A stretch of 57,547 bases of DNA from Klebsormidium nitens (lineage: Eukaryota; Plantae; Klebsormidiophyceae), in NCBI GenBank assembly GCA_000708835.1, contig DF237245.1:52491-110037 (forward strand), read 5' to 3'. Each line of letters opens with the position of its first letter. Positions within the stretch are counted from its first letter, which is position 1. The notes beneath the pieces were generated by a model, which was given only the letters and a program-made list of their open reading frames with translations, did not search any database and had not been told where the DNA came from. The position numbers and the translations under genes were made by a program. Shown piece by piece: positions 5,400 through 31,500 of the stretch.

Positions 5400-7560
5400 C
5401 TTTCGCTGCAAACCCTTCGTGCTAGGGTCCAAAAGCGAGTCCTTAAGCACAGTCGTTTGGGCGTCTGATCTAGTCAACATGTTTCATCCACGTCTATCCG
5501 GCCACCAACTAGCTGTACGCTAGTGAAGCTTGTCTGTCTGGTTTCCCAACTTTTAGCCTGGGAGAAAATGACACCGATCTGTTGTATTCCGTCCACCCGG
5601 AGTCTCGTGCATCCAGCAGAATAAAAGTTTGAGCTCAAAGCCCAGTTGAGCGCTCGTTTTCATTGGCGTTTGTTAGCTTCGCATCTTTTCTATCTGCTTT
5701 CAATGCCTCTTGGTGAGCTGCTTTAAGCTGCAAACTTTATCGATGGTCAATGAGCTGCACACAAAGACTGTCAAGGACGAAAATGCGTTGAAGTTGACCC
5801 GGCTAGGGAACCCTACCGGGGCACGTCTCGAAGGAACCTTCACCGACGGCATCATCCTTTCCTCGGCTGGATCCAAAAGCGGTCTGCAAAACAAGTTCAA
5901 CTCGTGCATTGCTTGTGAAGAGACCGGGTGTAGTCTTTGGGCAGGCTTTTAGATCTAGCTCGAATTGGCACCGCACGTCGTCTGAGAGCAAGAAAATACT
6001 GTGTTCCGTGCGAGGTCATATTGCAGAGGGCCAGGCAGATCTTGAAGCCCTCGCAAAGGCGACTCAGGGTGACCGTTTCAGACACTTGTGCTCGGTCCGC
6101 TTTCCGATGAAATGCTGGAATCGCACGTCTGGATCACAAAGAACAAGGTTTAGTGAAAGAATCCATTCTTTACTAGCCGAGGTGCGGACGTTGCCACCGC
6201 CACGTGATTTGAAACAAGAGACGCTGTTCCAATTTCCGAGTCCGGTGCATGCACTCGACTCATGGAGAACAAGTTCAAAGGTTGCCAGTGTGCCTCGAAC
6301 AATCACCTCTCCAGCTTTTACATCGCTCGAATCTGGTCATGAAACGCGCGCAACCATCAAGGAGATTGCCTGGTGGTCCGGCCCTAAATCGAGCGCCTCG
6401 GATCAGGAGCCCTGATGTCAATACGTGATACCTTGTTTCGGTTGCTGCGAAACAAGATTGTTCAGATGAGGGTTTTGCTGAGACGGTGTGTCTTGCTACC
6501 ACCCTGCTTCTTGCTCCGTTCTTTAGTACAGCAACTAGTGGAACTGAAGTCGGAAACACATTTCAATCGCACAGCCGTTTTGTCCGTCGAGCTCGGAATC
6601 AATGCGTCAGTAGTGTCACGCCCAGCCCAGAACCTCCGTGCACTTTGTTCCTGCTTGCGGTCTGAGGCGCCTTGCAAAGGGATCCACAAACCCGGAAACA
6701 GTTGTCGGCTTCCGAGCCCGCTCTCAATTCAAAAGAACATGTCGAAATCATTCCTGTAAAGGCCGACCGTCTAGCTTCATCGGACACATGCATGAGACCC
6801 TTGTCTACCGTAACCATTTCATGTCTTGGCAATGACTAGCGCTCTATTGCTTTGAGCTTCTCCTGCTCACGTGTAGGGTCATTGGGGCAGTCTGATGCCA
6901 AATTCCAGTCTGTCTGTCGCCGTCACACTAATGAAAATCACTGCGAGTCTTTATCGCTCCGTTTGGCGTTAGCATTAAGCACGTGCTTGAAACCATTTGA
7001 CGTCCTAGTATTGCGCCACATGCCGTACTCTCTTCTTTGGTCCTGGGAGCTCCATTGGTTGCGAACCATAATTTTGACCTGCTGCTATTGCTTGCACCGC
7101 GTTGAGTATTGCGGTAAGTTTATTTCCCGGTCCTCGGATCGGTCTTACTGCGCAAAATGGGTCTCCGCTTGAGGATGTGCACTGTACGAACATCGTCACC
7201 CAGCGGATCAAATACTGACCTGGTGCCTTTGTCACAACGTACAAACCAATCATTTCGAATTGCTNNNNNNNNNNNNNNNNNNNNGCGCAAATACTTCTAA
7301 CATCCGATGCCAACTCAACAAATATTTCGTGCTTCCCATCGAACAATCCTGTGTGGTCACAGCTCGCGTGCTTCCTGCAATCAATGGCGTCGTAGTCCGC
7401 CCCTCATTCTGCTCTGATATCTCTTGTTGCGATGGCCTTAGACGTCATTTTTGCAACTCGATATACTTCGCGGCCTTTAAATGACAGGCGTCGCCGCCTG
7501 TCGGGCCTCTCTTTCAGGATTTATAATCTGGACGCGCCTTCCGTTTAAACTGGACGTGGA
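5400..7560 (-). pseudogene. Decayed member of minus-strand family 'L' (LRR-like remnants); boundaries approximate
   Basis: Shares sequence with 23160-23900 (e.g. aactcgtgcattgcttgtgaa near 5900 vs aacctcgtgcattgcttgtgaa near 23406) and with 31340-31560. An LRR-like fragment reads FSSLTVFVCSSLTIDKVCSLKQLT. There are many stops. Confidence 0.45.
7265..7284. other. Assembly gap (20 N)
   Basis: A run of n in the sequence. Confidence 1.
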
Positions 7561-8099: not shown

Positions 8100-8760
8100 C
8101 CGGGGGTAAGGCTGGTGTTATCCGTACGTCCGAAGCAACTTTGATGTAGATTCCCCTTGGAATCACTTTCTTTTTCTGTTGATGTCAGCAGGTCGGTCCG
8201 TTTATGAATACACGCGCCGATCGGAGGACGCGTCCTGCAAGTCTGGCACAATGAGAAAGCTCGCGATAACAACTGTGTTGGAAGGTGACGCTTTCCTCAT
8301 ACGACGGGGGGGCCCAGATGTTGTCTATGAAGAGCCACAGGGGGTGACCGGAAGGTCAGGCCAAGATAACTTTCACTGTGAACGTGCCTCTGATGGCGGT
8401 GTTTCGATCAAGACAGCCATACAGACGGAACTCGGAAGCCTTACATTGGGCTCTTGTCTGTATAATTTTACGACGGACTAATTTACGACGGACTGATTTT
8501 GGGATACCGATGAAGAATCGTCTTTCCCTGCTTAAATTTGGACACTGTCTCTGACACTTCGTCGCATCCATGTCCCTGAAATTTCTCACACCAATCATTT
8601 TTTTCAAGATCGAAAGACGCCGACGAAAGACACATGTACAAGTGACATTGGATACCCGGGCAGCTTCGTGTTTGTCTAGTCCGATCGTTTGCGAAGCACT
8701 TAATCTCTTGACGTAGTTGGTACGGTCACGTGCTTTTATATATTAGCTCCCTTCCCGCAT
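8100..8760 (+). pseudogene. Decayed member of plus-strand family 'K' (unknown product); paralogs at ~26500-27100 and ~30240-30800
   Basis: Shared blocks are gaagagccac.gg.g..accggaag.tcag (near 8329, 26728, 30467) and gatcgga.gacgcgtcctgca (near 8219, 30359). All copies are interrupted by stops. Confidence 0.5.
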
Positions 8761-8859: not shown

Positions 8860-9227
8860 CATTAATAAGGCGTTTAGGTTGCAGTGCTAAAAAGAAAACC
8901 TTCAACTAGCTGTTCAATCAGAATGAAGGCCTGCTATTTATCAAACTTAGAATTTCTAGAAAGCTTGGGAAGGGCCATCTTAAATGGTTGTGCCTAATGT
9001 TTGCAGCAATGACGGTTCCTCCTTTAAGGATTTGCTCAACAGGGAACCCAAGGCTATAAAAGGCGCGGATGCTGCCATTGCTACCGGAGGTTTGCGAGCG
9101 TTGACTTCAGTTTGTTCTCCAGTGGCAATCAAGTGAACAGCCTACTGATGAGCCGTCAGCATTCCGATTTGGTTCAAGGCGATGAGGATGGGCGCAGCAC
9201 ATGCATGCATGAGCTCCGATGCGTTTG
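8860..9227 (-). pseudogene. L-family remnant, left part, split by the Plavaka transposon (continues at 21870-22160)
   Basis: Colinear with 30960-31305: gcagcaatga, gcgc.gatgctgcca.tgct, ttgacttc, gcgatg.ggat, tgagctcc. Confidence 0.6.
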
Positions 9228-9239
9228 CATCACAAAAGG

Positions 9240-9720
9240 TCACTCGATATCGAACCTATAGAAATCCGTACAGGCCCGTTTGGATCCTATACGCAAACCA
9301 TGTGTGGGCAGATCCCGTGTTGAGAACCATACAAAACCATATGGGCTTGGGAGCTATACATCTCCGATATCAAATGCATACAGATCCGGTATAAATAACC
9401 ATACAGGCTCTTTATAGGGTCGGTACAGGCATTGGTACAGCTATAGCTCCTTTATCGACTTGCACATGGGTCCTATACAACACACCATAAAGGCTTTACA
9501 TAGGGTTGATATGGCTGTCCATATAGACCTGATTGCTTATACCGGTTTCCTAGCGGTAGTTCTATGATATATGTATAAGACACATATCAGTTTCATATTA
9601 GAAATCATACAGGGTCTCGGGGGCTGTACAAGGTGAAGAAGTCTTCTGCATGGAATCCATACAGAGAATGTGTAGGTCGGAAACGTTACTGCATGGGTTG
9701 CGTACACAACGTATACCGAT
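9240..9720. repeat. Left subterminal field of short degenerate repeats (CCATACAG/GGTACAG/CCTATA)
   Basis: More than a dozen variants, including ccgtacagg, ccatacaaaa, gcatacaga, ccatacagg, cggtacagg, tggtacag, cctatacaa, tcatacagg and ccatacaga. Confidence 0.7.
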
Positions 9721-9962
9721 GTCGCTCGGACCACGTATATAAGTAGCAGCCAATTCAGATTCAACACGAGATTTCATGTCAAGCAAGTCGCCTTCTTACG
9801 AAACCAACTTGAAGCAAGCATCGATTGTCACAAGCGACCGGAGTATCAACAAGGATCGACTGTTTTGTTAGAGACCTGAAACAGCCGATGGTATCCAGCA
9901 AACTGGATGATGCTTGTCCACGTTTTCGCAAAAGTCAGGTCTATGCTGGCGAAACAACTCGA

Positions 9963-12900
9963 TTACAGACTAGGCTGATTCATATTGCCTCCTGCTCCTG
10001 ACATAAGCATAGCTACAGCTCTCGCTACTGCCTGCGGATCAAATTGCGCCGGTGCCGGGCAGCTTGGTACCCCTGGAATGTTTGTACCGGCCACGCTTTG
10101 CCCCACGTTCACGGGCTGTGAAGCAAGCGGGGTCCTAACGCTACCACTTGAAGCGTAACTGTTGGTCTGAGCGACGTTCGGAGGAGCAGCGAACTTATCC
10201 TCTCCGTTCATGAACAAAGAGGGTTCTGGAGCCCGGATGAACGGGTACTCCGCACCTCCGGCAAACTCGTCGACCTCCGCCTGAAGTGTCTTGATGCACG
10301 CCTCGTAGTGCAACGCCATGCTGCCATCATTGGGCAGTCGATCTGATGGAGCACGGTTTTCTTGAGGATTACCGATAACCATGTCAATCTGTGGAGGAGG
10401 GAGAGACGAGCGTGTTAAATACAGTCCGCATGGTCTGGCCATGTAAACCAATTACGAGACAATAATTCGATTTGGACGCTACTTTTCTGAATGACTGCAA
10501 GCTGATTGAAGCTGACCGACGGACTCTTAAAGGCCTCGGGAGCGGTGCTTTGAGCGAAACTAGACCCGCCAACCAAAGGCAGAAAGAAAAAGCAATATTT
10601 AACGAATGAATCGTAGGCAAAGGCTCAGTAAAGCGGAAATTAAGGGGACATGTAGCCTTCCGTTCTATTATCTTCTAAAGACCCTTGCAATCAGTCACGT
10701 GAATCTCAGAACTGACGTTGTTAATCTTGATTTTAATCTTGAAAAGACGACTCGAGCAGGGACACTAAGTACTCCTTCGTGAGAAGGCAGACCTGGGTGC
10801 CAATGACTGTGCAGACATAATTTGAATCAGAGTGAAAGATTTCGTCGAAGAGAACTCACCACTGCAACCACGATAGCTGCTTGCTGAATGAAGACGTGCA
10901 ACTCGTCGACCCGCTCGTTCCAGTTGGCGAGGAACACGTGGCCAATGACCTTCTTCAGCCTGACGTCTCCCAAAGGATCACCGTTACGCACACGGAAGCC
11001 GGTGCCTGAGTAAGGAACATGTCAAATGTCAGATCGTTGATCAGCTTGACTTCAAGCCTTCATTCAATCTTGCCGATCGAATCAGGTTGATTCCATTGCA
11101 TACTTCGTAGACCTGCGGCCCATTCCTCTTTTGCTAGATCTCATTGGGATCGTTTCTTGCAGGAAGGAGCGCTTGCCTCTTAGAAAATGCAGGATATTAA
11201 GAAGTGCCAATCAGTGCAGAGTTTAGATTGAGCAAAGAATTACGAAGCAGAACAAAGCTGACTTGTAATGTGTACGTTGATTATAAGCTCCCTTCAGGAC
11301 ACAGGGTTTAATGCTTGAGAAATAAGTGTATCCCCATGCTGCGCAGGTCAAGCAGTAGTTCAAACTCAGCGTGGTTTCAATAGGACCTCGAACACCAATG
11401 TTGAGTCCCTGGGGCAGACAGGCCGAGTACAGGTCGCAAAGTCTGTTTATCAGGTCAACATGTAAAACAGTGCTGTAGCTTATAACGTGGGACTTGAAAG
11501 CAGAAAACTTGCAAGCAAACGTTAAGAAGCAGACCCTTTCAAAGGTCTCACAGTCAGATTTCATTAATGGGCTTCCAGAAATATTGCAGTGTTCTAGCTG
11601 CTTGAACAAAGTCTGGGGAAGCTTACCTTGCAGTGGGGCGATGTCAGCCAGGAAGCCATTGTAGTCCGACTTCGGCTTCCGGATGTTGTAAACCAGATGT
11701 AGTCGATGTTTGACCTTCTTGACCACCTCGCTGCGCTGCTGCATCTGCTTGGTGGCAGCCGCCTGCCAGAGTTCTCCATGATTGGCCACCCACCCAACAG
11801 TCCAGTCGTAGTCGTCTTCGGGCACCTTGAGCAGGACCCGCGCCATTTTGGCAATTGGGTCCACCGTGGTGTAGAAGCCTCCCTCGAGAGAGCCGTTCTC
11901 AAACACTGCGTGAACCGCCATCCCAATCGTCTTCTGCAGAGGTGGAGCAATCAGGCTAGTTTGATGTGTGAAACACATAAAACATAAGTAGTATGAAGAT
12001 TCTGATTGCAAAGAAGTGGGCGCGCACAGGGAATGCACATGCCTAGCTGCTTGTGGACAGGTTGCTAATGCAAACAGGAAGTGAGGTTTGCGCCTTCAAC
12101 AAGGGAGCAAACTTCTACAGCTCTGGAAGATTGTTTACAAAGAAGTATAAGCTGCGGTGGGTAGCTAAAGCTGTTTTTGGATTGATTGCGATCTGACACG
12201 GGTCCCCTTAAGCAGGCTGGACACCGCCTGATTGGATTCCATATCGAAGAGAACGTTTAGAGTCCAAGTTGGAAGCTTTGAAAGTATTTGCTGCAAGTGA
12301 CCATGACCTTCTGTTCAACATGTTTGGTGGATTCAGTCAACTATTGTCCAATAAGTGCTCTCAGAGATTTGCTCACCAGCGTCTTTGGGGTGTTGTACTT
12401 GTTGGTGGCTCCGCTAGTGTTCCGTGGCGCGTGGGATGTTGCCACCGAGCTTGGGCTTCCACCTTGCAGGGCGCCTTGCATTGCTTGAGTCACCATGGCC
12501 TGGATCATCGGAAGCAGGCGCATCATCCCCCCGGGAGGCGCCTGGATGGCTGCAAAGCTCTAGGACAAGCCAGACGCAGCTGGTGGCGAAAAGCCGAATG
12601 GCACTAGAGCTGTGGAGGCAGCATTCTGGCTGCCTTGCATGGCCAGAAGCTCCTTCTGGAGCCTGATCTTCTCTTGGAGCTGCAAAATCTGGCTCTTGGA
12701 AGTCACTGCTCCTGGAGCTCCACGCTTGGCAGACGGTTTCTTCGAGGTACCTGCAAAGAGATGCAGCTTGTGAGCAGGGGGAACTGGGGATAAGTTGAGG
12801 AGAGGAGTAGCGACTTTTAAAGAGTGCTCAGGATATAATTGTTCAAATCCCAGCTTTCTGTCCGCTGCCGTCGTGTAACACGACTCTCACCAAGAATTCC

Positions 12901-13690
12901 AAGAATTTAGCTAATGCTTACACACCTTCCCAACCTTAAGGCCATTCCAAAGAGCATCTGAGCTCAAAGCACTGACTTGAGAATATTTTGATAAGAGCCC
13001 TCACAAATATTTGGTTATAAGAAACCCCGAGGCAACGAACGTCAGACAACAACACCTACATAGCTGAATGCTTGAAGGTGTCTCGCAAAGCCTGATCCCG
13101 TCCGATGGGTTTGACCAAGGTCAAAAGAAGGAGAAAACAAACTCCAGTGCTTCGCATGTTGCAGCTTAAAGAAAGCGCCTGTTAGCTTCGCCCCAACACA
13201 TGGAGAGCCTGATTTACTTGCCTGACTTTGTCCCCTTGCGCTTCTTCTGTTGCTTCTCGCTGTGACGCCCCCCAGCCTGTCTTGCATCTTCTCGCTGCTG
13301 CCCTTTCTCCCGAGCCTCCTCCATGATCTCCTCCAGAGAAGGCAGCTTGTCAGCAAGGCGACTTCCTTTGACCGCTGACCCTTCACCGTCCTCAGCTTCG
13401 CTTCCCTCCTCTCCGTCCTCCTCATCTCCTTCCTCCTCTTCCTCTTCGTCGTCGTCATCTTCCCCTGACTCGTCGCTGTCATCTTCAACGTCCTCCAGTT
13501 CAATTTCCGTCTGTCGCCTGCTAGCTGCCTTTTGTGATCTTCTGCGCAGGGGACTCCGGCTGCGGTCTCCATCATCATCGTCATCATCGTTAAAAACTTG
13601 CTTTTTCCTCCTCTTGTTCACTGCCGAGACATAGCCCTCATCCTCCCCTCGTGCCGGAGGTCTCCGCTCCCTCTTGTCAGTAGCAGGCAT
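9963..13690 (-). CDS. Transposon-borne accessory gene, multi-exon, with an acidic/basic low-complexity N-terminus; probably damaged
   Basis: Exon 1 runs from ATG 13690 to ~13217 (MPATDKRERR...DDDDEEEEEE...KKRKGTKSG). Further exon-like blocks with GT/AG borders are ~12750-12375 (QILQLQEKIRLQKELLAMQG), ~11935-11630 (KTIGMAVHAVF...DYNGFLADIAPLQG), ~11010-10860 (DVRLKKVIGHVFLANWNERVDELHVF) and ~10390-9963 (IDMVIGNPQ...NQPSL*). There is an in-frame TAG at 12560-12562. Confidence 0.65.
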
Positions 13691-14345
13691 GGTGTACTGC
13701 GTCAGCTCAGAAAGGACCGTTTGCAGTTAAAAGCTAGCGACTAAAGGCGCTTGAAGAATGCTTGCGCATGCAGGACAACTGATAGAGGAAAATTCTGAAC
13801 ACCGTATCTAATGGGGCAAACATCTCGGGAAAGTATTTGAACTAGTACTAGTAGCAATGAGGAACGGGAGCAGGAGCCCGCCAAGTGCCTCCAACCACCT
13901 TCCAAGTTGAGAATCAATACGTAGTCATTGCTCTCATTGGCAGGCGCAGTCAGCCAGTACGCTACAACGCTTTCTGAACTTGGGCCAAGAGAAATTTGAA
14001 ATTTGGCGCGAGAATCAGCCACAGCGGTCGATATAAATCTTTCCAGCACATCGACGGTACACACTAAAAACTGCATACAAAATTGAAACCTTTTTTGACA
14101 TGCCGATCAGAAGAAATGGCGCGCGCCCTACCACCAGCGCGGCCGGGCCCGACCGCTTTCCGCGGCCGCTCGATCAGGCTTGAATGCTCTAAATAGAGAC
14201 CCTCAATCTGACTGGTCAGAAAGTGGACTTCGTCGTTTGGGACTTCAACATTTCTCAAGGGCTGCGCTGCTTCCCCACTGCACTGCAGGCAGAGGAGAGC
14301 TGGGGTTTTGACAGTCCTTTTGAAAATTTGTCTTGAAAGGACAGC

Positions 14346-17300
14346 ATGTTTAGCTGTACGTGTGGCTCTGCTTTTCCAACAGCACAGCAGCTGAGCAATC
14401 ATCGACGCAGTAGCACTCGCTGTGGGTCTCAAAATCCAACGAAGCGTCCAAGATTGGGTACACCGGGTTTTGCTCCATTCTTAGGGGCTCAGAATCTGGC
14501 AGCAGGTGTTGTTGCAGGTCAATGGGGACCCGCCCCAGCTGCAGGGTTGCAGGACCGGGAGAGGGGAGGTTTCTCCTTTGGGAATGCACCTAGCATTATA
14601 TCTATTGGCCAGCCTTCGAGGTTTCAGTCTGCGATTGATGGCTATGAATCTCCGTTACCAATGTCAGCAGGCAACTCTGAAGGCAACGTCCCCCTCCAAG
14701 ATCAAAGCTGCTCATCAGCTCCCATCCCACAAGCATTTGACCCTAGCAAAGCCTTGCTGGACTTCTTGACAAATGCTTGCCAGGGCAAAGGGTTGTGCAA
14801 CTCTGACATAGATTGGCTGCTTGGAATCATTTTCCATCCACATTTTGACAGGGAGGAATTAGAGTTTCGAAACTCTAAACAGTACCGCAAGTTCCAAGAT
14901 GGCCTACAAGCGATTCAAAATGCAATGGCAGCGCTGGAACTAGGCGGTCTAGTACCAGATGAGAAGGTGAGCCATCAAGGTGGTGCCTGAAAGCGGCTCT
15001 GGTTTAGAGTGTCTTTGACACTCACTTGTTGTCTTTGAGTCAATTGAGCTGCATTGTAATTGAGCTGTCCTCTGCTTCTGATACGTGTTCATTGTGGAAC
15101 TCAATGGCAATCCTGATGTACGAAAACGTTGCAAAGATGTTGAATTTACAAGTATGAGAAGAAGGCTTCATGCTTGTGGTGCATTGAAGAGCTTACGCTG
15201 GAGGTCATGGGATGGGGCCTTCGACCTACCAATGAATGTGATACTAGTTCCCCCTTTGAGCAGGGCTGGTACTCGCGAAATATGCGACAGGAGGGCGATC
15301 ATCAGGACCTGATCTTTCGGTGGAGGGATCCGGTCGAACTGGTCCGCAAGCTGTACGGCAACAAGCGATTTCGAGGGTCGTTCAAGGTCTATGCAAGGCC
15401 CATCTATAACAAGGATGGCGAAAGGTGTATCACTGATGCGGCATCTGCCGATTGGTGGCTCCGATTTCAGGTAAATCTATTGAAACTATAATCTTGCGCT
15501 CTACTTGTGTGCGAATCTGCTGCAGCGCAGTGGTCATGGTGGCGGAAGAAGTTGCTCATTGTAATGCTGGTTTTATTGCATACTCCCGCTTGGAAGCAGT
15601 TTCTTTGCTTGGACCTTTGCTTGGTTCTTTTGCTTGGACCTTTTGTCATTGGCCTGACGGCGAACTATCTCGGGGAGCGTCCATCGTTTGGAGCAGATGT
15701 TTGCGAACTGCCACAAAAAGTTCTGAACTGATTGTTTACTATCCTCGATTTTGTCGGTTTCTGCTCTAAATCAAGGTCTTGTGTGCAGGAGAGAATCGAT
15801 GGCCTGGTCGCTGCTGTTGCGCTCTACAGCGATCCGACGGCGGTCTCGAGCGACATGACCATCACTGGGTGGCCAGTAACGCTTACCATCAGGAACATTG
15901 GTCCGACCGTGAGGCACCGGGGGGAGTTCGCTATTCTCGCGGGTATCGTGGCGCAGCTCCAAGAGCTTCCAGAGTATGGTAAGATCTGATCTGAGAGCTA
16001 GTGCAAGCACTGCAATCTATCTGACCAGCCACGCTGCCATGTCACGGTTGGCTGCATTGCACAATGTTATTGCTTTTACAAGTGATGCACTCTGATTCCT
16101 CATAATAGCGGCCCTTGAAGATTGTTCACCCAAACCACGCTGTGTTGTCAGGTTTCATTGCTTCCTCAAGAGCATTCAAGGAGCGACGCTCCACTCTCGT
16201 GTGGCAGTGCGAGATCCAGCTCTTATCAGTCCTGAAAGCTGCCAGCTCGAGGTGAGCGCCACTGATTTGAGAATCCTTAGCCGTGAATATTTCCTGCCTG
16301 TCCTCTTGTCCGCCGTTTGAGTGGATGGTAGAACCAGATATGCTTGCGCTCGGCAAGCATTTGCTTTGTAGAAGCCAATTGGGTTTGCAAGAATTGGGTT
16401 ATCTGCAAACGGCCTGTTTAATGACAGTACCATCACAAACTGTCCTAGGTGCCTTGAAGGTCACTTCCTGTTGCATCGTTTGATCAGTTTGTGCGTCGTC
16501 TTATTTTCCAACTTCATTCTGCTTCTCACATTCCTGAAATGCTTTGCAGAGGTGTTTACATGCGCGATCCCTGGGGCGTGCTACGGAAGGTTTACCCCGG
16601 GCTCCACTCTTACAGCTGTGATCTTCAAAAAGCTTACAAGCTCGGGGTTGTGAAGACTGGACGATGCCTTGTCTGCCTTGTTCCGGTTGCGGAGCTCAAC
16701 GATCTGGAGGGTCGTTGGTCCGAGAGAACGGAAGCTTTTATGGGGGAGGTGGTGACCGTATGCACCGCTGCTCTAGAAGAAAGGAGCCCGGAGTGGTTGG
16801 CAGGGTTGCGCAGGCGTGCGATGAAGCAGGGATCTCTCTACCCATCGAGGTGCGGTTCTGTTTGAAAGGGCAAGCTTGATAGCATTCGTCTCCAACGCTC
16901 CTGGAAGGCTGTTGTCTGCTTTCACGTTGGTCCAAAAGGATGCTAGTAGCTGATGTATATTGGGGGGGCAAATCTGCAAAAGGATTCAGCCAATCCGAAG
17001 CGTGCAAAAGCGGTCAGGTCTTTGTGCTTGTTGGCTTGTGTTTTCTCAGCCTTGCTGTCTTGAGAGCCAAGAGCCCTTGAAAACGAAGCCTTAACCAGGA
17101 CACCTACAGTTGAGCTCATCAACTTCGCTCTTGAGAAACCTGCTTTGATACATGGTGCAATCAAGACGAGCTGTCCATGCAGATTGCGCGGAGTCTCTTC
17201 GATGTAGGCTCGTCAGATGTACTCAACAAAACTTGTCCACGATCAGGATATGCACGAAAGTTGGACTGCCGCATCAATCGATCTTTAGACCATTTGCTTT

Positions 17301-20300
17301 TTGTCGCAGGGCTGCTTGTGGAACTGGTACGAGGGCCTCGACCTGCCGGACGATGTTCGAGACTCCTATCGAGCCCTTGTCCCCAATACTCTCCATGGTA
17401 TCGATCTCGGAATCTGGTTGTACCTGGTCGACGGCATCCGGGACTGGGCTAAGGGGCAGTATACAAGGCAGTTGGCGGCGAAGAGGCTGCGGACAGTGGA
17501 CGCGCGTTTGAGAGGCATGCCTCGGGAGTCGGGCTTCCGTCTGCCAAGGCGGAAGGGCGTTTACATGGAGAAGAAGAAGACTTACAAGGGGTATGAGCAG
17601 CGCAACATGATGCAGGTAACACGAGATTTCGGGCAACCCCGCTGTCTTTTCTCGTATCCAAGTTGGTGGATTCTCGTAAGCCAGGCTTTTGAATCTCACC
17701 AACGTGAACGGCAAAGACAGCAATGAAGCTCTCCGGAATTCCTACCTGTTGCTACATTTCCTGCTTTGTGCCTTGATTAAAGCTACGCAGGCTGAGCAGT
17801 CCCTGACCAATCTATGATTCATGTCGTCTTCGAGTTTTGGAAAGGCGGCATGTCAGATTTGATGAGGTGAGATGTGAAGCCATGTTTTCCATCTCATTAC
17901 TCTCTTCTTTGTTCCTCCTCATCGTCCACGCTTTGTTATTGATACAGCTTTTCGTCTTCGCCATCGTCGGCCTCTTCAAGCAAGCGAACGGCCGTGAGCC
18001 TTTCGTGGAGCTCATTCTACAGTTCCTAGACTGGTATATGCAACTGACCCGGCGAAATCTGCCCAAGTACCACACGAAGGCCAGTCTTCGGAAAACGGAC
18101 AAGTTGGGCATCAAGTAAGTTCGTCTCCCACCAATGAACTCAATGCTCCGTTGCTAAGCATGTAGGCTTTCTAAGAAACAAATCGAAGTTGCTTCACAAG
18201 ACCGATAGTGTTTGCTTCCTGAGCTAGAGCAAAAGAAAACGAGCAGGATTTTTGCAACTTCGGTGCGGAAAACAGAGTCTTATGCGGCAAGAGATGTTAT
18301 CCGCTCCTGACTTTCATGAAGAGTTTCTTTCTCATACGTTTCCATCAAGCGATCACTGCATGTACTCTCAGCAGAAATTGTTGACACGCAAGAGGCTTTT
18401 CGAATTCAACCTTCTCTCCGTTCTCAGTGACCAACGTTGTGTTATAGAATAAAGGTGTGTCGATCTGACTGTCCGTCTGCAGGTTTGGTCGCTCGGCTGT
18501 CCGGTTCCTGTCCGGCGTTCAAAAGTCCGACTTCAAAACGGCCAAGTTCCATCACATACCCCTCTACACCAAGGTCATCCAGGCGCGGGGCCTCACCTCG
18601 GAGACGAGCTGCGAGGAAGGGGAGGGCAGCCACGGCCGCACGTCAAAGAAGGCTTACCAGGCCTCAAACAAGAAGAACACTGGAGAGCAGGTAACTGCGC
18701 TTCCCTGCTGGCTAAATTTATTTTTTCCATCCAGTGTGTTTCCTAGTCGCTTTCGTTTTCCCAGTTCAGATGCCTTTCTCTAACCGGGCCGAAGATATGA
18801 GCGTCTAAGGAGCGACAGGAGAGAATGATAGAAACGAAGAAATTGGTCGACGGAGATGCTGCGACTGATCATCTTGTAATTAACCTTTTGGCGTCCCTTT
18901 TGGTCGGAAGCTGCACGTTTGCGAGATTGCAGGTGGCAGCCCACTGATTCCTTGAAATAAAAGTTGGCGACACTGTTAATTGCCCTTCCACACTTCCACA
19001 AGTCACTTCTCTTGGTAGTCATCTCAAGTACCTCTTCCTGATGATTCGTTTTGTTGGTGACCGCAGGTTATGCGGTTTAACCAACGCCGGCAGAATGTTG
19101 CCGAGTACGTGGAGGGCTGCAATACGGGCCGCCGTGGGTTCCGTATCCAGCGGAGGGTTATGGTGACAGCCCTTGCTGCCACTGAAAAGGTCCGTATCTC
19201 AACATTTGACAGCCGATCTGCTATCGTCAAGGGCAGCCCTTAAAGGTCAAGAATCTAGATAGGGGCTTGAAGCCGTTTGCTTTTTCAGAATCCAAGCTTT
19301 CAAAAAGCCGTTGCACGATCGCAGTGTCTCTTAAACCCAAGCAGCCGTTCGGCGCCACCAGTAATGTGCAAAGAGGGGGGCAGCCGGGCATCGATTAGAG
19401 CCCCCCGAAGCAGACGGATCCAGACAGCCTGGCGCGTATGTTGGTGCATAGCCGGGGGGCCCAGCCGGGCGCCCCGAAGGGAGACTGCGGACTGACTTGG
19501 ACTGTTTTCAACGTTTAAATCGAGAAATCAGGCTACAGTTGAAGTACGGAAACCTTCTGAAATGCCGGCTCTTCCTTCTCGCAGGCGGCTCGACAAAAGA
19601 AACACGTCCTGGCAGCAACTCGAGTACCGCTCCGGTGGGAGTGGCTCCGACCAGCGGGTCAAGCCACGTACCCCCGGTTTCCAGACCCGGGGTCTCGTGC
19701 GGGCAAGGCGATCGTGAAACGGATTGCTCACCAGTACAGCGACCTGCAGCATCTCGAGCGTTGCACGCGTGTATTTCTTGCCGGAGGCCTGCAGGGTGTC
19801 CGAGGGGATGCAGCCTTGCTGGAGAATCTTCCGAATTGCCAGAACTCTGAGGTGAGTCCACTTAAAACACCCTTTAGATGGCCACTTTCAGTTCTAGGGG
19901 AGAGCGACAATTGCCGGACTTTCTGGATGCACCTGGGAACTCCTCGTACGGGCTGTGCCACGTAGCAGCCTTTCTCAAGAAACACGTTACGGTCAAGATC
20001 GTCCGCTCTGTTTTCTCGTCACAATCGTCGGTATGTATGCCATTCAATGCTTAAGCTGGTGTCTAGTCAGTCCTTGGATATCTTGAATGTGCAGCCAGAG
20101 GTCTAAAGCTGTCCGTTGAATTCCGATTGGCCGTCCAGTTCTGTGTGAGCTCTGTCTAGAAGCTCACTCGTTTCTTCTTGTTCTGATTGGTCCGTACTTC
20201 TTTGTACGCTTCTGCCGGCGCTCTCCGGGATTATCTGAAACGGCGAGAAAGATTCTGCATCTGCTACCCTACGGTCTTTACCCGGGCCTGAGCGAGTGGT

Positions 20301-20927
20301 CTTTCTTTGCGGTGTCTGGATCACCGCCCACCGTCCTTTGGGCCTTGTTCATTAGTGTGCATACTTTATAGTTTCCGTCTGCTTCAAACCTGGCCAACCG
20401 TTTAAACACTGCCGACATTCTGTCGCGCCTTTCGACTGACAACGTCGGGTCGGGAACAGATTGCTTTGATACACTGGTTGCAGATCCGGGTTGCAAAGCA
20501 CGCCGCCATTGCACCAGGGAGAGGTAGCCGCTTCCAAGAGCACGTGTCGATCGCGCACGCAGATCCGGAGTTTCACAAGAAGCCGTACTACAGCAACGTT
20601 GCCGTTCTTGCTGCCGATGGCAGCGAATGGTACGCTAACGTGAGGTTATTGTTCTCTCTAACCGATCAGAGGGGTCGCAATCGGAACCTGGTCTTTGTAA
20701 GATATCTTGAGGATTATAGAGTGCCGGACGCAACTACATGCAAGCGGCTGAGTTGGGCCAAATACCTTCATAGAGGCCAGCATGTAGACGAGTGGTATGA
20801 CGTCATCGAGTTGAAAAGCATTCTGCGAACAGTCTACCTGGTGAAGGATTGGAATCGGGAAGGCGGTTTCTATTTAAACAGATTCAAGTGGTCGTCAGAG
20901 AAGCGATATAAAGGGAACAAGGTGTAA
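14346..20927 (+). CDS. Plavaka-type transposase, at least 11 exons
   Basis: The N-terminal Zn-finger-like segment is CTCGSAFPTAQQLSNHRRSSTRC. Family-like blocks include RDPVELVRKLYGNKRF..YNKDGERCITDAASADWW, ALYSDPT..GWPVTLTIRNI, GVYMRDPWG..VYPGLHSYSCD..KTGRCLVCLVP, PNTLHGIDLG, KTAKFHHIPLYTKVIQARG..EEGEGSH..KKAYQASN and a C-terminal YYSNVAV..WYANVRLLF..YDVIELKSILRTVYLV. Inferred exons: 14346-14966, ~15190-15470, 15789-15978, 16152-16251, 16550-16849, 17310-17615, 17948-~18114, 18483-18690, 19067-?, ?-19851, 20484-20927. The family assignment is from remembered motifs, not a search. Confidence 0.85.
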
Positions 20928-21599
20928 GAGTCACTGATCAGAAACCAACGGTACAGTGACTTGGTATGTGTTGCTGGAGGATCGAGATCATCGTAGTAAT
21001 CGTGAGAGATCAGCAGTTAAGATAAGCCCGCCTGTAGTAATGTTGATTACGACCTACTGCCCAACATGTCACCTTGTTTCGCAAGGATAGCGGCCGCCGT
21101 TATGTGCGGCCTGCTCAACACTTCTTGGAAAAAAGCACTAGACCAGATTTCAACGCTGGGATAATGAGATCATCAATCACACGGTATTGGCCTCGGGCCC
21201 CAGACTTCCGGATTGAGTAACTTGTTCGGTCTTAGCTTGCGGTCGGATCCATTTCAGTTTATCTTATGTGTACAATATGAATCTTGCAAGTTAAGCATAA
21301 CAATTCGTTGCGAACAATGGCCGGCCGTAATTAATGCAGCTCCGGGTGAGGCACCGCGCATCAATTGCACATGCGAGCTAAGGGCTAGGTATGTTGGGCA
21401 CGCACGTATCCAAATGGTGTTTCTCGGAAAATATGCATGCGCAGTATACCCGTCTTTGGTCCGTTCGTATAATGATTAGGCCGGATAATTAACATGCAGC
21501 CGGCCCCATGCATGCCAGCCTGGGTGCCGCACCTCGCGCGGCTGAGGGCCGGGATAGCATGTCCTTCACACATCCGATCATTCATATAATATTTTCATG

Positions 21600-21850
21600 G
21601 CATACGTCATACTGCCGCTTCGAAATAGACTAATATAGAAGAACCGACTGAGATACGTACAGTTCCCATGCAAAACTGTATGCCAACGATACAGACTCTA
21701 TACCGCGCCTACATAGTCAGCTTTCCATATAGATTATGGGACATGTACAAGGTCTTTACAGGTCCATGCAGAGCTACATAAATCCTATTCAAAGCCTGTA
21801 TGGCCCAGCTTCCTGTACCGGTTTTCTACCGGTTCTATACGAAACTATAT
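21600..21850. repeat. Right subterminal field of the same short repeats
   Basis: ctgtatg, gatacag, cctgtatgg and cctgtaccgg. The reverse complement ccatacaggctttgaatagg resembles the left-end ccatacaggctctttatagg near 9400. Confidence 0.7.
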
Positions 21851-22599
21851 TGGCTGCCGTTTCGTGATGTGAGCTCATGATTCCTTTGGCATGACGTCGG
21901 ATGCCTTGTCGGCGACATGTTTCGCACGTTCCCCATATGCATCAGGCACAACTGCATAAACGTGCGCCTGCCTTTGTGCCTCTAATTGCTGCGTTGACGT
22001 TGCACTCCTATCGAGTTCTTTTTGCCACTTGTTTCGCTCTCGCGTCTTCTTGATTCATGGACGCGGGCCGCCAAGCTTCTTCTGAAGAACTCGTTTGAAG
22101 GCGCAAGTTCCGTACAAGTAATATGCTGACATGGTTTGGGAAACGAAGGCGCGTGCGGAGATGCAAGCTTCTCATAATTCAATATTATCTCAAAGTTACG
22201 CGCCCACGGTCGGGCGGCCGCGGCGCTCGCAAGTCGGCCGCGCACGCATGCGCAAGGGCTTGAAGCCGCCAGTCAGCCGCGCGGGCGGCCGCGCTCAGGA
22301 GAGGCGGGCGCACATGTTGGTCGGGATCTCAGACCCGCCTGGCCAGCAAGATTCCAGGGAGAAGCCCCCGATTACTTGCAAATCAGCGTGCCTCAAAAAC
22401 CCTCCGCAAGGTGGGCATAGGATCTGGTTGGTGCCCTGAGGTGTTCGACGGCTGTGGGCTTTCCGCAGATCGATCTGCAATCAGGTGCTTTTCCAAGTCC
22501 CATATTGGACTGCTTTTCAGAGAAATCCTGTGGCAGCAATGTGATTGTGATATGAGCTAAACATCCGCGGGGAAAAAATGCTGCGCGCTGGAGCGAAGG

Positions 22600-25500
22600 G
22601 CCGCGAACCTCCGCAGCGGCCCCGGCTTGCTTCTTCAATCAATGCTGTCTTTGAATGAGCAGCACCATATGCTCTATTTGTAGCTGCACACAGCGCTTTG
22701 CTTTCAGGTTTGCCATTATAGGGGATCTGAATGCGGGGTTCAGGTTTGCGACCCATGTCGCTCCTACTTCGCATAGTGGGCCGTCGAAGATTACGTTTGT
22801 GCAGACACCTGTTAATAAAGACGCGTTATGATGCGCAGACTAGGGCCACGCCGTCGCTGTTGTTCAAGACAGTACATTATGTATGTTCTGTTAGCAATTC
22901 GTCGACCTGTTACCTGTAAGCTTTTCCATTCCTTTGCTCTCAAAGTTTGCTTGAAAGTTCTAGAACTCAGTGTAAGAACCAGTCCTATGGCTCGAAGTTA
23001 TCGCTGCGTCAATCTGACGTCGTTTCTTCTTTGCCCGCACTTTTCCCGCTTTTCTCGATGCTAAGATGCCAGTATCAGCAGAGCAATATCTTGTCCTGGT
23101 GCATCCACCAGATTCGGATGAGAATCCGACAGAACCGACTACCCGAATTGTACTTAAAGCCCAATTGAAAGCGCTCGTGTGTCGCTGCGTGTGTCAGCAT
23201 CATTTCTCTCCCGAAGTGTTGACAGTGATGCGCACGCGCAACTAAAGTTTGGAAAGCTCGAAGTTAGCAATTTTAACGCTACTTTGAACGGTCAGAAAAT
23301 ACGGCCTTGAAAGCTTTCAAGGACGAAAAAGGCTGAACTTGGCCCGGCAAAGTGAAGCTTGCCGGGGCACGTGTCAAGATGCAAAAGGACGGTCAAATCA
23401 AGGTCAACCTCGTGCATTGCTTGTGAAAGATCGGGCCGTGATATCTTCGGGCACGCTTTTCAAGCTCGACTTCGGCACCCATCGGTTCTGAAAGCAAGGA
23501 GTACAAAATTCTAGGAGAAGTGAGACTGCAGACGCCCGGGCAGCTTTGAAAGCCCTCGCAAAGGAGACTTTGCCGGGTTGGTTGTTTGAAAGACCTGCCG
23601 TCTGGGTCGGACTCGGAGTTGATGGCATAGTAGCCACTCATTCGCTCCTCGTAGATGTTTCGAGCGCACTTTGGACATTTTGAGACCTGTAATGTCAAAT
23701 TGACGGGTTAATGTCGGTCCGCTGAAAGCTCTGAAAGCTCTGCTTCGATACGTACTGTAAAAGCAGAAGGGAGGCGCTCAAACACCTTCAGTCCTTGGCA
23801 ATGACAAGGGTTTCATCGGGTCTAGTAATCACGTTTTAGCAAAAGGGCTAGAACCCACGTCACTGGGCGGTACTGCGTTGACGCCACGGACTTTCGAATC
23901 ATTCCTTTCACACTCTGGCCCAACATCTATCACCAAACAAACTAACTTCAGTTCCAGGCTTTCCGCACGTCAACATAAGCTTTGCGACAAGCTTTTAATC
24001 CTTAAATTCCTGGTCTGAGGCTACATACAGCACTCTTTTCCCCTTCTCACCGGTGCCCCATATGTATAGGACATTTTGACGTCCTGGCTTTGTACAGCTT
24101 TGCCTTAACCCTCTTCTCAGTTTATGGATCGTATTCTTCAAGTTGGGCATGCGTCTTACTACGATATCAAAGGTTTCTCTCAGGATGTGTCGACGAGCAT
24201 CTTGACCCAACGGCTCGAATCCGATTACTGCTCCGGTATTTCTGTTAAAACGTAAGACTCAGCTCGACTTTCTCGATACTGCCATCTCTACGTACAAAGT
24301 TTTGGAATGACGTCGAAGATGGGAGGACCTGGCACTGATCTTGCCAGACCCTGTCTCAAGTTTCTGGCCGGGTCAAGAGCAACTTCTGCGCTGATGACGT
24401 TTTAGGTCCGCTTGTCGCCTTTTTTGGATGGCTCTTTTCCTTGGGCGGTGTTTCGGTAGCGATTTTGAAAGAAGGACAAAAGTTTGAGAGGCTTTCACCG
24501 CTTTGAACCCTCAAAAGCAATGCAATAACTGACCGCGACTGACATTAGATCAGTCTTGATGCAAGTCGGCGCATACGTGAATCTGCCGAGGAAGAGAGAT
24601 GTGCGACCGGGGTCAACAAGACCACCGACGAGTTGGCCTCAACGGAACCTCAATCTGATGGCGTGTCCGTGACTCAGAATCTGTATCCGTTGCTTCATGC
24701 TAGTAGGTGTGATCAGTTGTGACGACGTCCTCATGCAAGCGGGTTATGCAGAGCTTTTCTCTCCGGCTCCGGAAAGTGCTTCTCCCTCATTTCTGGTTGA
24801 TTGCCCCCGCTTTCCGATTCTTTTGGATGCGACATCTTTCTGCCTAAAGGCACTGTCATTCGCAGCAAGAACAAATATTGCCACGATTGACAAGCCTAAA
24901 GAGTTTGGGAGCCGAAACTGACCTCGGCGCAGCTCAACTACTCTGGCTTTCCGCAAGCTGCGACGAAGATGCGCCACTGAGCAAAGGACAACCTGACGGG
25001 TAGCCACAAGAATGGGGCATCTAAAAATGTCAAAATCTCATCCTTTTGAATGCCAGGCGGTGCTGCAAACGGGCTGCAAACTGATGTACCGTTGTCAGAC
25101 TCGCGCCACGCAGTCTTGACTGACGTCACGGATGTGCTTTTAGTTTCCCACTGTTCAAGGAAGCACTTCTGATTGGCATCTTTACCGTTAAATGGAAGAA
25201 GCAAAGAAGAATTTGGAAGCGACTGAAGACAAGAGACTTGTAGCGACTGTAGAACCTTGTAGCTCTTCGAGATTTCGAGAAGGGTAACAGGCGATTGAAG
25301 CTTCCTGGGATTACGACGCAGCTGGATGTTAAGACATCGCCAGCTGTTGCTCAGGAGTGGTTTTCATGTATTTCGATGTCAATTCCTTCGTGCTCGACTC
25401 TGTCTTTTGTCATCTTTCACCAACTTTGGCACGGATTCATCGCTCCGACAATAAGTTAGTATGCCAGTTGCTTGAGTCGATTCTCTGCAGCGCATCGCTT

Positions 25501-28500: not shown

Positions 28501-31500
28501 TAAACGAGAATGATCGTTCTCCTGATCACATGCGTGTGTCCTAAAGCTACAATGCTGGTGCCTGACTGTATCCCACACCGTCTACTTGCTTTACTCGGTT
28601 GCGGCACGATCGCGGCACGGTCAGCTGTTTGAACGGTGAAGTCTGACTTTGATGGCAGCTCTTTCTTCTGAAGCACGTGCCTTCGCACGCTTGACGTCGA
28701 TTGTTGCGGTGAAACTGCACGACAGCGCTGCGATTGTGAGCTTGCTCACAGGAACCTTGGGTGGATTGGAGAGCACATTAGAAGTGACCTGCGGCAATGA
28801 TAAGCTTTACGCGTGGGCTCTGTTCGAGCTCACTTGATGGCGACTGCAATACGCCTGATGCCATCTTGACGGCAAGCTTCAGTTACTTCGGCAAGCAGGA
28901 GCACATTTGGCGGCTCGCTTACATTTTTCTCTTCCTCGTTGCGATCTTCGGGGATCCAGTCGCGATCTGGACTGTTCTTTGCCCACCTGGCAAAGAAGGT
29001 GGCCTTGCTCTACCTCAAGTCGTAGATTGAATAATCCGCACTGGCCGTTGCGGGCCTCTCATTTTGACCAGGTAGTGCATCTTCCGGACATGAAGTTTCT
29101 GCGCTGCGGCTCACCTTGTACACTGTTCCAACGAAATGAAGAAACTGGTGCACATAAGAACGCGGCGGAACCTTGTTGATCGCAGCGTGATCGCAGCGCG
29201 CGCGAGCGCGTGATCGCGCGTGATCGCAGCGCGCGCGAGCGCGCTACAGCAGCGCGTCTGTGGGCGCGCGCAACATGCCGCAAAACTGCAACCTCAGCAG
29301 TGATGCCCACCCTGCAAGATCGCCGCGGCCAGCCGTGGCCGCGGCCGCGGGCGCTCATCTTGGAGTTTGCATTTTTCTGCAACATGCGGGAGCATCTTTA
29401 AGCCGGCATAAACCGTTCGTTCGAGCACTCTTTTGGGCAGAGTGCCGATTGATCCAAATGTATGTTGTGCTCTCTTGCTTACGTCCGTGATTCACGTGTA
29501 AAATCTTTTCTCTGGTCTCGAAACAGGCGTCCTGCAAGTTTGGAACGCTGAGAAAGCTTGCAATATCAGAACTGCAGAAGTGCGTTGAGATGACGCAGCT
29601 GTAGATTGCCAAACGCGCTTTTCTGAGTTGCAGTTTGATTGTTGCGGTAGACTTGCAGTACGACAGGGCTTGAGAGATTCTGGTGGTGGAGTGAAGTGCA
29701 TATCACGATCTGCGGCAATGAGAAATCATACCCGTGGGCTCTACTCAAGCTCAAATGTTGTCAGAACGAACCTCCTGATGCCATCTTGACGGGCAAGCTT
29801 CGGTTACTTCAACAAGTTTCTGGCACAGGCTGGCCGCGCGCTTCTCTTCTTCTTCTCTTCCTAACCGCGATTTCTGGCGGATCCATCGGAAGTTGCGCTC
29901 TTCTTTGGCCACCTGCACGAGGTCGGCTTGGCCTCGAGTCATAAGATGAAAACCAGCACTGGCCGTTGCAAGCCTTGCATCTGGGCTAGGGAATTGAGTC
30001 TTCCGGCTATGAAATTTATGCGCTGCGGCTAATCTTGCACACTTTTGCAAAGGAAATGAAGAGATCTCAAGCTGCACATACGAGCGGGGCGGAATCTCGT
30101 TGGGCGGAGCGCGCGCGAGCGCGCTTTACAGCGGCCCGTCTGTGGTCGCGCCCGAAAGGTCGCCGAGGAGAGTGAACCCTCACCCTGCAAGGCGGCCGCG
30201 GCCGCGGGCGCCCATTGCATGGTTCTGCAACAGCACCTTCAGGCTGATATACTCTTCCGTTTGTCCGATGTCACGGTTTGGTAGGGTGCCCAATGAAAGC
30301 CATTCTCCGTCGCTTGTTTGTTAAGTCAGGTCTAATTCAACCTATCTTAATATGCGCTGATCGGACGACGCGTCCTGCACATTCGAAACATTCAGAAAGC
30401 TCGCAATAAGACTTGCGTGGGGATTCGACATTCTCCCAAAAGGACTGGGGGCCGGGAAACGCCTATGAAGAGCCACGGGAAGTAACCGGAAGATCAGAAC
30501 CGGCCAGAGTTTTTTTCATTGGTTCGTGTCTCTGATGGCCGGTGCTCATTTCAAGATCGAACATGCATCCAGACGGACCTCCGAAATCTTCCGAAAGGGC
30601 CCTTGTCTTGTACGACGGCGTTTATAATTTAGGAGCGCCGATGAAGACCCGTCTCTCTCCGCTTGAATCCAGACACTGTCTTTGACCCTTTGTCGAAGCC
30701 ACGTTTTCAAACCCCGTAACAATTCCGTTGGTTTCAAGAAGACGTTGACCATCGACAGAAATGAGGTGAACTTGATGGGCTTTGTTTTGTCTAGTCGGAT
30801 TTGTTTGCAGAGCATCTGACCCCTCGGTTCACTTTGTGGTGTGTTGATTCAAACTCTCTTCCTTTTTTAAAACTAGTTCCGCTGTGTAGAACCCTTAACG
30901 GGCATACAAGAGCTCTTTGGCGGTTCGCGCGTGCCAGTCAGATACAGCATCCAGGCGCTGCCGTTTGGCGTTTTTCAGATTGTAGTGCTGTGCCATAGGA
31001 GTTCTGAGCTTTGCGGACGTTGAAATTGTACTAGTTACCAAGCTTGCAAAAGCAAGATTTGGTTGTCACGTCAGATATTGGCAGCAATGATGATCTTTCC
31101 CTTTGAGCCTCGCTCAGAGGCCTGAGTGCGCCGATGCTGCCACTGCTCATAAAATGCCGCGGCCATTGACTTCGTTTCGCTCCAAAGCGGCGACCAAGCA
31201 CATGAGAATCTACCATTCAAGGGAACAGATATTCAGTCTTTAGTTTGGATCTCGATTCGATCTCATGCGATGTGGATTCAGCGCGTGCCTGAGCTCCAAT
31301 CCATTTGAGCTCACATCTCTAAGTGCAGTACCCGATGCCATCTCGAGAACGTCTTTCGTTCCCTTCATCGAGCAAAGTGGTTTAGTCATGCACAGCTCGC
31401 GTTCTGCTCTTTGGCATCGTAATGCGCCCCCCTTTGTGCTCTAGTGGTTTACCCCATTGACGTGGCACCCATCAATCCGTTCAAAAGGTCTGTCCCGTGA

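What the first reader, a model, noticed from the sequence alone, without database searches (positions are those of the whole stretch)
9228..21869. Complete 12.6-kb Plavaka transposon with resolved ends, 2-bp TSD and an empty site in the same window
Seen: CATCAC...GTGATG termini with 18/25 TIR identity, TG on both flanks, and a gap-free match of the reconstructed target to the paralog at 31294-31313. Known: Plavaka transposases were described mainly from fungi and linked to the CACTA/Mirage/Chapaev (CMC) group, whose members make 2-4 bp TSDs. Inference: this defines a whole-element architecture (TIR, TSD, subterminal repeats, two divergent genes) for Plavaka in a probable green alga. I do not know of such a description but cannot confirm novelty.
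Basis: partly seen in the sequence, partly recalled or inferred. Interest (0 to 1): 0.78.

Follow-up and report, generated by a model that had tools for sequence, protein, structure and literature searches.

The report
Broken two-gene Plavaka transposon, Klebsormidium

Summary
The segment 9228-21869 (12,642 bp) starts CATCAC and ends GTGATG. Its inverted ends match at 18 of 25 positions, against 0 of 200,000 random pairs. TG lies on both flanks. The flanks, joined with one TG, align without a gap at the junction to a paralogous empty site (TG at 31306-31307).

Two exons hit Pfam Plavaka (PF18759) above its cut-off. The ends carry RTACAG(G) subterminal repeats. Two divergent genes lie inside:
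- an 11-exon transposase on the + strand;
- a 5-exon gene of 573 codons on the - strand, with no relatives beyond a few Klebsormidium-type sequences.

A sister copy in K. nitens has the same two genes under adjacent locus tags (KFL_002880170/180).

"Complete" is only structural. The second gene has an in-frame TAG at codon 220. The transposase has a 1-nt deletion in exon 5, so it stops at codon 522 of about 959.

The novelty is overstated. CATCA..TGATG termini with 2-3 bp duplications define fungal PlavakaB (Kojima 2025). Giant Plavaka elements are described in red algae, and Plavaka is reported from streptophyte algae.

This scan had already noted other, larger Plavaka elements elsewhere in this genome. 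I file this one as a new member of a known kind.

The parts
9226..9227 (.). left copy of the 2-bp target site duplication (TG)
9228..9252 (+). left terminal inverted repeat, begins CATCAC
   Evidence: 18/25 match to the right end; 0 of 200,000 random pairs reach this
9268..9664 (+). left subterminal region with 7 forward RTACAG(G) motifs
9963..13690 (-). second (accessory) gene, 5 exons: 13690-13222, 12750-12377, 11933-11627, 11005-10860, 10388-9966, with stop TAA at 9965-9963. 573 codons. Intron 1 is GC-AG. Modelled on the sister protein KFL_002880170.
12560..12562 (-). in-frame TAG at codon 220 of the accessory gene, inside exon 2. No frame-preserving intron can remove it.
13691..14345 (.). 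655-bp region between the two divergent start codons; presumed shared promoter region (inferred)
14346..20927 (+). Plavaka transposase gene, 11 exons. E1 14346-14966, E2 15264-15470, E3 15789-15978, E4 16152-16251, E5 16550-16795 and E6 17310-17615 are supported by Pfam and/or sister proteins. E7 17948-18114, E8 18483-18690, E9 19067-19189, E10 19585-19851 and E11 20484-20924 come only from my own splice-site and codon-score chaining. Stop TAA at 20925-20927.
16782..16785 (+). site of a 1-nt deletion (AGGGAG to AGGAG) in transposase exon 5. Upstream the gene reads ..TAALEER in one frame. The last four codons before the donor (EPGV|GT, as in the sister's EEREPGV|GCLW) are in another frame.
21657..21818 (-). 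right subterminal region with RTACAG(G) motifs (3 inverted, 2 forward)
21845..21869 (-). right terminal inverted repeat, ends GTGATG
21870..21871 (.). right copy of the 2-bp target site duplication (TG)
31214..31424 (+). paralogous unoccupied site; the single TG that corresponds to the duplication is at 31306-31307

Best explanation
The segment 9228-21869 is one insertion of a PlavakaB-type cut-and-paste DNA transposon (CMC/CMCT group) in a Klebsormidium-type streptophyte alga.

Its DDE transposase is an 11-exon gene on the + strand. In the working element this enzyme would recognise the CATCAC..GTGATG ends and probably the RTACAG(G) subterminal repeats. It would cut the element out and reinsert it at a 2-bp staggered cut, which is repaired into the TG duplication seen here.

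A second, divergently transcribed gene encodes a lineage-specific protein. It has a basic and acidic disordered N-terminal half and a conserved, probably helical C-terminal half. It travels with the transposase in at least one sister copy. By analogy with TnpA of En/Spm it may bind the subterminal repeats, but that is inference only.

This copy is structurally whole but is probably dead as a source of protein: the second gene has a nonsense codon and the transposase has a 1-nt frameshift. It could move only if an intact relative supplied the proteins.

Shown here: the ends, the duplication, the empty paralogous site, the Plavaka domain, the gene pair and the two lesions. Inferred: the roles of the repeats and of the second gene, and mobility in trans.
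For: - Ends, TG flanks and TIR statistics.
- Empty paralogous site with a gap-free junction and collinear flanks.
- Pfam Plavaka PF18759 above the 26.3-bit cut-off on two separate exons (39.6-40.3 and 31.2-31.4 bits), plus a weak third exon in the right profile order (19-99, 110-149, 201-271). No other transposase family is listed.
- Sister protein KFL_002880180 (P0009) scores 77.9 bits on Plavaka and is 76-86% identical to exons E1 and E3-E6.
- Sister accessory protein KFL_002880170 (P0005) aligns to all five minus-strand exons at 46-81% identity. It carries the adjacent locus tag on the same 113-kb contig.
- Subterminal motif enrichment.
- The published PlavakaB definition (CATCA..TGATG, 2-3 bp TSD) matches.
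- Lesions.
Against: - Only one copy could be examined at the DNA level, so the 2-bp duplication and the exact ends are not confirmed on other copies.
- The empty site is a roughly 70-84% identical paralog, not an allele.
- Exons E7-E11 come only from my own splice-site and codon-score chaining, with no homolog or RNA support.
- The frameshift is inferred from one annotated sister protein. It could be a homopolymer error of the assembly.
- No phylogeny places the transposase inside the PlavakaB clade.
Confidence: 0.85

Rival explanations
1. The element is an intact, autonomous copy. Under this reading the TAG and the 1-nt deletion are assembly errors, or are bypassed by splicing that differs from the sister's annotated models.
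For: Each gene has only one lesion, and everything else stays open and conserved. The deletion lies in a short G run. The sister models are automatic annotations, and P0009 itself skips exon 2.
Against: No intron of plausible length and phase removes the TAG. In the upstream frame of exon 5 the only phase-0 donor is a very poor GTTTGA directly before a stop (score -5.3). The acceptor CAG|GGC of exon 6 is fixed and is shared with P0010. The shifted frame reproduces the sister's EPGV|GT exactly.
Confidence: 0.12
2. It is an EnSpm/CACTA element proper, or another CMC lineage, and only resembles Plavaka. Kojima found this for some Puccinia families.
For: Plavaka and EnSpm transposases are recognisably similar, and some Plavaka-like proteins belong to EnSpm elements with CAC..GTG ends and 3-bp TSDs. 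No phylogeny was made here.
Against: The termini are CATCAC/GTGATG, not CACTA/CAC, and the duplication is 2 bp, not 3. Pfam lists only Plavaka, above its cut-off, on two exons and on the sister protein.
Confidence: 0.04
3. There was no insertion. The 12.6 kb is ancestral sequence that was lost from the paralog, or the resemblance of the flanks is chance.
For: The comparison is with a diverged paralog, not an allele.
Against: A deletion would not leave inverted-repeat ends, a flanking dinucleotide repeat and a transposase exactly inside the missing stretch. The junction alignment scores 81 against 21 +/- 3 for shuffles, and the TIR match has no equal in 200,000 random pairs.
Confidence: 0.02

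Closest known systems
PlavakaB families of Agaricomycotina fungi (Kojima 2025, PMC12730594; e.g. PlavakaB-1_SLL of Serpula lacrymans)
   Same: Termini 5'-CATCA..TGATG-3' (here CATCAC..GTGATG; the fungal examples read CATCAG..CTGATG). TSD of 2 or 3 bp. Plavaka-type DDE transposase. CA..TG ends of the CMCT group.
   Different: The host is a streptophyte alga. The transposase gene is split into 11 exons. The second gene is an orphan protein, not a TET/JBP dioxygenase. Membership in the PlavakaB clade was not tested by a tree.
Giant Plavaka elements of red algae (Bostrychia moritziana preprint, 10.1101/2025.02.11.637652)
   Same: A large Plavaka DNA transposon of an archaeplastid that carries non-transposase genes. 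Most copies there are degenerate.
   Different: Those are 17-19 kb and carry three accessory genes (PAG1-3: an N6-adenine methylase and SET protein, and a ParB-like/2OG-oxygenase protein). Here there is one accessory gene with no such Pfam domain. Homology to PAG1 could not be tested.
En/Spm (CACTA) elements of land plants
   Same: CMC-type DDE transposase. Short TIRs plus arrays of short subterminal repeats. A second protein (TnpA) besides the transposase (own knowledge; Yuan and Wessler 2011, as cited).
   Different: CACTA termini and a 3-bp TSD. TnpA and TnpD come from one transcription unit by alternative splicing, not from two divergent genes. No sequence similarity of the second protein was found.
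Other Plavaka elements noted by this scan in the same genome (about 16-kb kinase-carrying elements; H3-carrying elements)
   Same: Same genome, same transposase family, cargo-carrying layout (unchecked AI notes).
   Different: This element has no kinase or histone gene. It is smaller (12.6 kb), and its proteins found only a few 61-86% identical relatives. Whether its second gene corresponds to their 'orphan gene' could not be tested.

Membership tests
Plavaka (Pfam PF18759; Iyer et al. 2014) | The transposase matches the Plavaka profile above the curated cut-off | tested here: met
   Exon 15264-15470 scores 39.6 bits (E 4.7e-10, profile 23-99). Exon 16551-16784 scores 31.2 bits (E 1.7e-7, profile 202-271). 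The cut-off is 26.3 bits. Exon 15732-15986 is weak (E 0.23, profile 110-149). Sister P0009 scores 77.9 bits over profile 58-322.
PlavakaB (Kojima 2025) | Termini 5'-CATCA..TGATG-3' | tested here: met
   CATCAC at 9228-9233 and GTGATG at 21864-21869. Definition as.
PlavakaB (Kojima 2025) | Target site duplication of 2 or 3 bp | tested here: met
   TG on both flanks and a single TG at the paralogous empty site, with a gap-free junction. One copy only.
PlavakaB (Kojima 2025) | Transposase groups with the PlavakaB clade in a CMCT phylogeny | not tested
   No named fungal PlavakaA/B or EnSpm sequences could be obtained by reference.
CMCT group (EnSpm, Mirage, Chapaev, Transib, Plavaka) | [quoted passage not shown] | tested here: inconclusive
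   By eye only: candidate first D in ..LYSDPT.. (E3), second D in ..SYSCDLQ.. and C(2)C in RCLVCL (E5). A candidate H..H and E lie in ..KFHHIPLY..SCEEGEGSH.. (E8, an ab initio exon). No alignment to reference transposases was made.
En/Spm (CACTA) proper | CACTA/CAC termini and a 3-bp TSD | tested here: not met
   The ends are CATCAC/GTGATG and the duplication is 2 bp.
Autonomous (coding-intact) element | Uninterrupted reading frames for the element's genes | tested here: not met
   Accessory gene: TAG at codon 220 of 573. Transposase: exons E1-E5 sum to 1364 nt (remainder 2 on division by 3), and as assembled the reading stops at codon 522 of about 959.
Red-algal giant Plavaka with PAG cassette | Accessory genes with DNA methylase/SET and ParB-like/2OG-oxygenase domains | tested here: not met
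   No such Pfam domains in any ORF of the element or in sister P0005. The one weak 2OG-FeII_Oxy_4 match (E 0.11-0.16, far below cut-off) lies in the transposase C-terminal exon.

The most novel reading that the evidence does not exclude
The second gene may be a dedicated Plavaka partner protein, functionally like TnpA and binding the RTACAG(G) subterminal repeats. It may be distantly related to the basidiomycete DUF6532 (PF20149) proteins, which expand together with Plavaka/KDZ transposases. If so, Plavaka elements of fungi and streptophyte algae would share an ancient two-protein transposition machinery that has not been recognised.
Probability: 0.1. Interest if true: 0.55.

Novelty: new member of a known kind. 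Interest (0 to 1): 0.3.

Why it matters
The insertion is cleanly delimited, base by base, as a Plavaka element of a streptophyte alga. It shows that the CATCA..TGATG ends and the 2-bp duplication defined in fungi also hold in the plant lineage. That fits the published view that Plavaka is ancient in Archaeplastida.

It also gives a curated two-gene model that genome annotators could use to mask such loci, with intron positions, one GC-AG intron and a partner gene without known domains.

It does not change what is known about how these elements work. This copy is itself defective.

Tried and rejected
Other copies, for a TSD table:
- Two metagenome scans, with a transposase exon and with P0001, found nothing.
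- Scans of viral contigs and genome contigs with P0009 found nothing.
- No second copy or derivative with these termini lies in the window. The MITE at 39957-40153 has unrelated ends.

Identity of the second gene:
- Pfam gave nothing on its exons or on P0005.
- The word search gave nothing.
- The Atlas search of the window exon gave nothing.
- The full HMMER search of 1.84 billion representatives found only two short ORF calls about 81-82% identical to the window exon.
- AlphaFold2 of P0005 gave a mean pLDDT of 41.6, too poor for a fold search, so none was run.
- The Atlas search of P0005 gave only a weak DUF6532 lead.

Other checks:
- The flanks have no Pfam domain, so no host gene could be named as the target.
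- Rfam found nothing in the window.
- I considered rescuing the TAG by a small intron (candidates of 55, 26 and 17 nt have the wrong phase or are too short) and rescuing the frameshift by another donor. Both were rejected.

Joined models: the spliced models were not searched as joined proteins. Exons were searched one by one by reference. Joining was done only inside scripts, to count length, phase and stop codons.
Full report
**Observation**

The sequence reads ..GCGTTTG|CATCACAAAAGG.. at 9228 and ..CGTTTCGTGATG|TGAGCTC.. at 21869. The left end and the reverse complement of the right end agree at 18 of the first 25 positions. None of 200,000 random position pairs in the window reaches that.

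TG flanks both ends. When the element and one TG are removed, the joined flanks match 31283-31313 without a gap (84% identity). A longer local alignment of about 230 nt (31214-31424) scores 81, against 21 +/- 3 for shuffled targets, and has no gap at the junction.

The match is embedded in collinear paralogy on both sides: 8214-8573 with 30354-30704, and 22208-22312 with 31680-31771. So the boundaries are fixed independently of the inverted repeats.

The single TG of the unoccupied paralog is at 31306-31307. The element itself ends in TG, so the 2-bp reading assumes the symmetric CATCAC/GTGATG ends. The empty site is a paralog, not an allele.

**Subterminal repeats**

The motif RTACAG(G), often preceded by CC or CG, occurs seven times in forward orientation in 9268-9664. 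There are 29 forward copies in all 57.5 kb, so about 0.2 would be expected there. At the right end there are three inverted and two forward copies in 21657-21818. Both ends also share TATAGAA..CCGGTACAGG about 30-55 nt from the tip.

**Transposase**

Two + strand exons hit Pfam Plavaka (PF18759) above its 26.3-bit cut-off:
- 15264-15470: 39.6 bits, profile 23-99;
- 16551-16784: 31.2 bits, profile 202-271.

A third exon (15732-15986) hits weakly at profile 110-149, in the right order. No other transposase family is listed.

The word search with exon 1 found four relatives. One is K. nitens KFL_002880180 (P0009, 359 aa, Plavaka 77.9 bits). P0009 is 76-86% identical to exons E1 and E3-E6 and fixes their splice junctions.

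Exon 2 most probably starts at 15264. That position has the best acceptor and is where the Pfam match begins.

Downstream of E6 no homolog was available. I chained exons with a small dynamic programme (codon score, GT-AG sites, no in-frame stops). This gave five more exons ending at the TAA at 20925-20927. These five are ab initio only.

The N-terminus carries a C-x-C-x12-H-x6-C motif that is conserved in the sister sequences P0006 and P0007. It is a likely DNA-binding finger, which is an inference.

**Second gene**

The minus-strand ORFs had no Pfam hit, no word-search hit and no Atlas hit. The full HMMER search of 1.84 billion representatives then found only two short proteins, 81-82% identical to the query.

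One of their clusters contains K. nitens KFL_002880170 (P0005, 590 aa). P0005 aligns to five minus-strand exons at 46-81% identity.

Junction analysis gives these exons: 13690-13222, 12750-12377, 11933-11627, 11005-10860 and 10388-9966. Together they make 1719 nt, or 573 codons. The first intron is GC-AG, with donor GCAAGT.

The sister genes have adjacent locus tags (..170 and ..180) on one 113-kb contig. So the gene pair is a property of the family, not of this locus.

The protein has a basic and acidic N-terminal half and a conserved C-terminal half. AlphaFold2 of P0005 was too poor to use (pLDDT 41.6), so no fold search was run.

**Lesions**

- Accessory gene: there is an in-frame TAG at 12562-12560, codon 220, in the middle of exon 2. 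No intron of usable length and phase can remove it.
- Transposase: exons E1-E5 sum to 1364 nt, which leaves a remainder of 2 on division by 3. Exons E6-E11 sum to 1512 nt.
  - Around 16776-16797 the conserved ..TAALEER reads in one frame. The last four codons before the donor, EPGV|GT, read in the frame shifted by one.
  - The sister has EEREPGV|GCLW, so one G is missing from AGGGAG.
  - In the upstream frame the only phase-0 donor is a very poor GTTTGA directly before a stop. The exon-6 acceptor CAG|GGC is fixed and is shared with P0010.
  - As assembled, translation stops at codon 522 of about 959.

Hence the copy is structurally complete but probably non-autonomous. An assembly error in the short G run cannot be excluded.

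**Host**

The closest proteins are K. nitens proteins and unnamed sequences from JGI/IMG, ENA and Logan assemblies, at 61-86% identity. Earlier notes of this scan name the genome as Klebsormidium nitens. The flanks have no Pfam domain. They belong to a roughly 70% identical unit that is repeated three times in the window.

**Comparison with what is known**

- Kojima 2025 (PMC12730594) reconstructed complete fungal Plavaka families. It defines PlavakaB by termini 5'-CATCA..TGATG-3' and 2 or 3 bp TSDs. Its supplement shows CATCAGAAA..CTGATG insertions. These are the ends seen here.
- The Bostrychia preprint describes 17-19 kb Plavaka elements with three accessory genes in red algae.
- The Spirogyra pratensis genome paper reports Plavaka in red algae, chlorophytes, and streptophyte algae and moss.
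- An Auxenochlorella preprint reports EnSpm-Plavaka insertions that are polymorphic between haplotypes.
- Searches for Klebsormidium together with EnSpm found no description of such an element in this genus.
- This scan had already noted several other Plavaka elements elsewhere in the same genome, of about 16 kb and carrying kinase or histone genes. I did not check those notes.

**Lead not resolved**

The Atlas feature search of P0005 places it nearest to basidiomycete DUF6532 clusters, with scores of 0.90-0.91 but only 152-155 shared features. The tool's own guidance rates that as weak. Pfam does not list DUF6532 for P0005. One paper lists DUF6532 among domains that are enriched together with KDZ and Plavaka in some Ganoderma genomes. 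This is a hypothesis only.

**Limits**

No TSD table could be made.
- The joined spliced proteins were not searched. Exons were searched one by one by reference.

**Verdict**

It is a PlavakaB-like two-gene DNA transposon and a defective copy. I file it as a new member of a known kind, of modest interest.

Noticed in passing
P0005 (sister of the gene at window 9963-13690): The ESM Atlas feature search puts the accessory protein nearest to basidiomycete DUF6532 (PF20149) clusters (0.90-0.91, but only 152-155 shared features). DUF6532 is listed as co-enriched with KDZ and Plavaka domains in some Ganoderma genomes. It may be the fungal counterpart of the Plavaka second gene.
   Followed up: partly
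window 12751-13221 (- strand): Intron 1 of the accessory gene is a GC-AG intron with the consensus donor CAG|GCAAGT.
   Followed up: partly
window 8205-8573, 26603-26766, 30354-30704 (and 5870-6064 ~ 23378-23569): The transposon sits in one copy of a roughly 70% identical unit that is repeated three times in the same orientation. The unit has no long ORFs and no Pfam hit, and its nature is unknown.
   Followed up: partly
window 9210-9216 and 21870-21876; 31290-31296 and 31306-31312: The target region carries TGAGCTC twice, 18 nt apart, in both paralogs. The insertion lies at the start of the second copy. This may be coincidence or a target preference.
   Followed up: no
window 7265-7284: A run of 20 N (scaffold gap) lies 2 kb left of the element.
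   Followed up: no
window 14346-14430 (+): The transposase starts with a C-x-C-x12-H-x6-C motif (MFSCTCGS..NHRRSSTRC) that is conserved in sister sequences P0006 and P0007. It is a candidate C2HC DNA-binding finger.
   Followed up: partly
window 20484-20924 (+): The C-terminal exon of the transposase gives a weak, sub-threshold Pfam match to 2OG-FeII_Oxy_4 (E 0.11-0.16). It is probably noise, but 2OG oxygenases are known Plavaka cargo.
   Followed up: no
window 39957-40153: The MITE noted by another reader has termini unrelated to this element (GGTAAGTAAAGAGTGACTTAA..). It is not a Plavaka derivative.
   Followed up: yes
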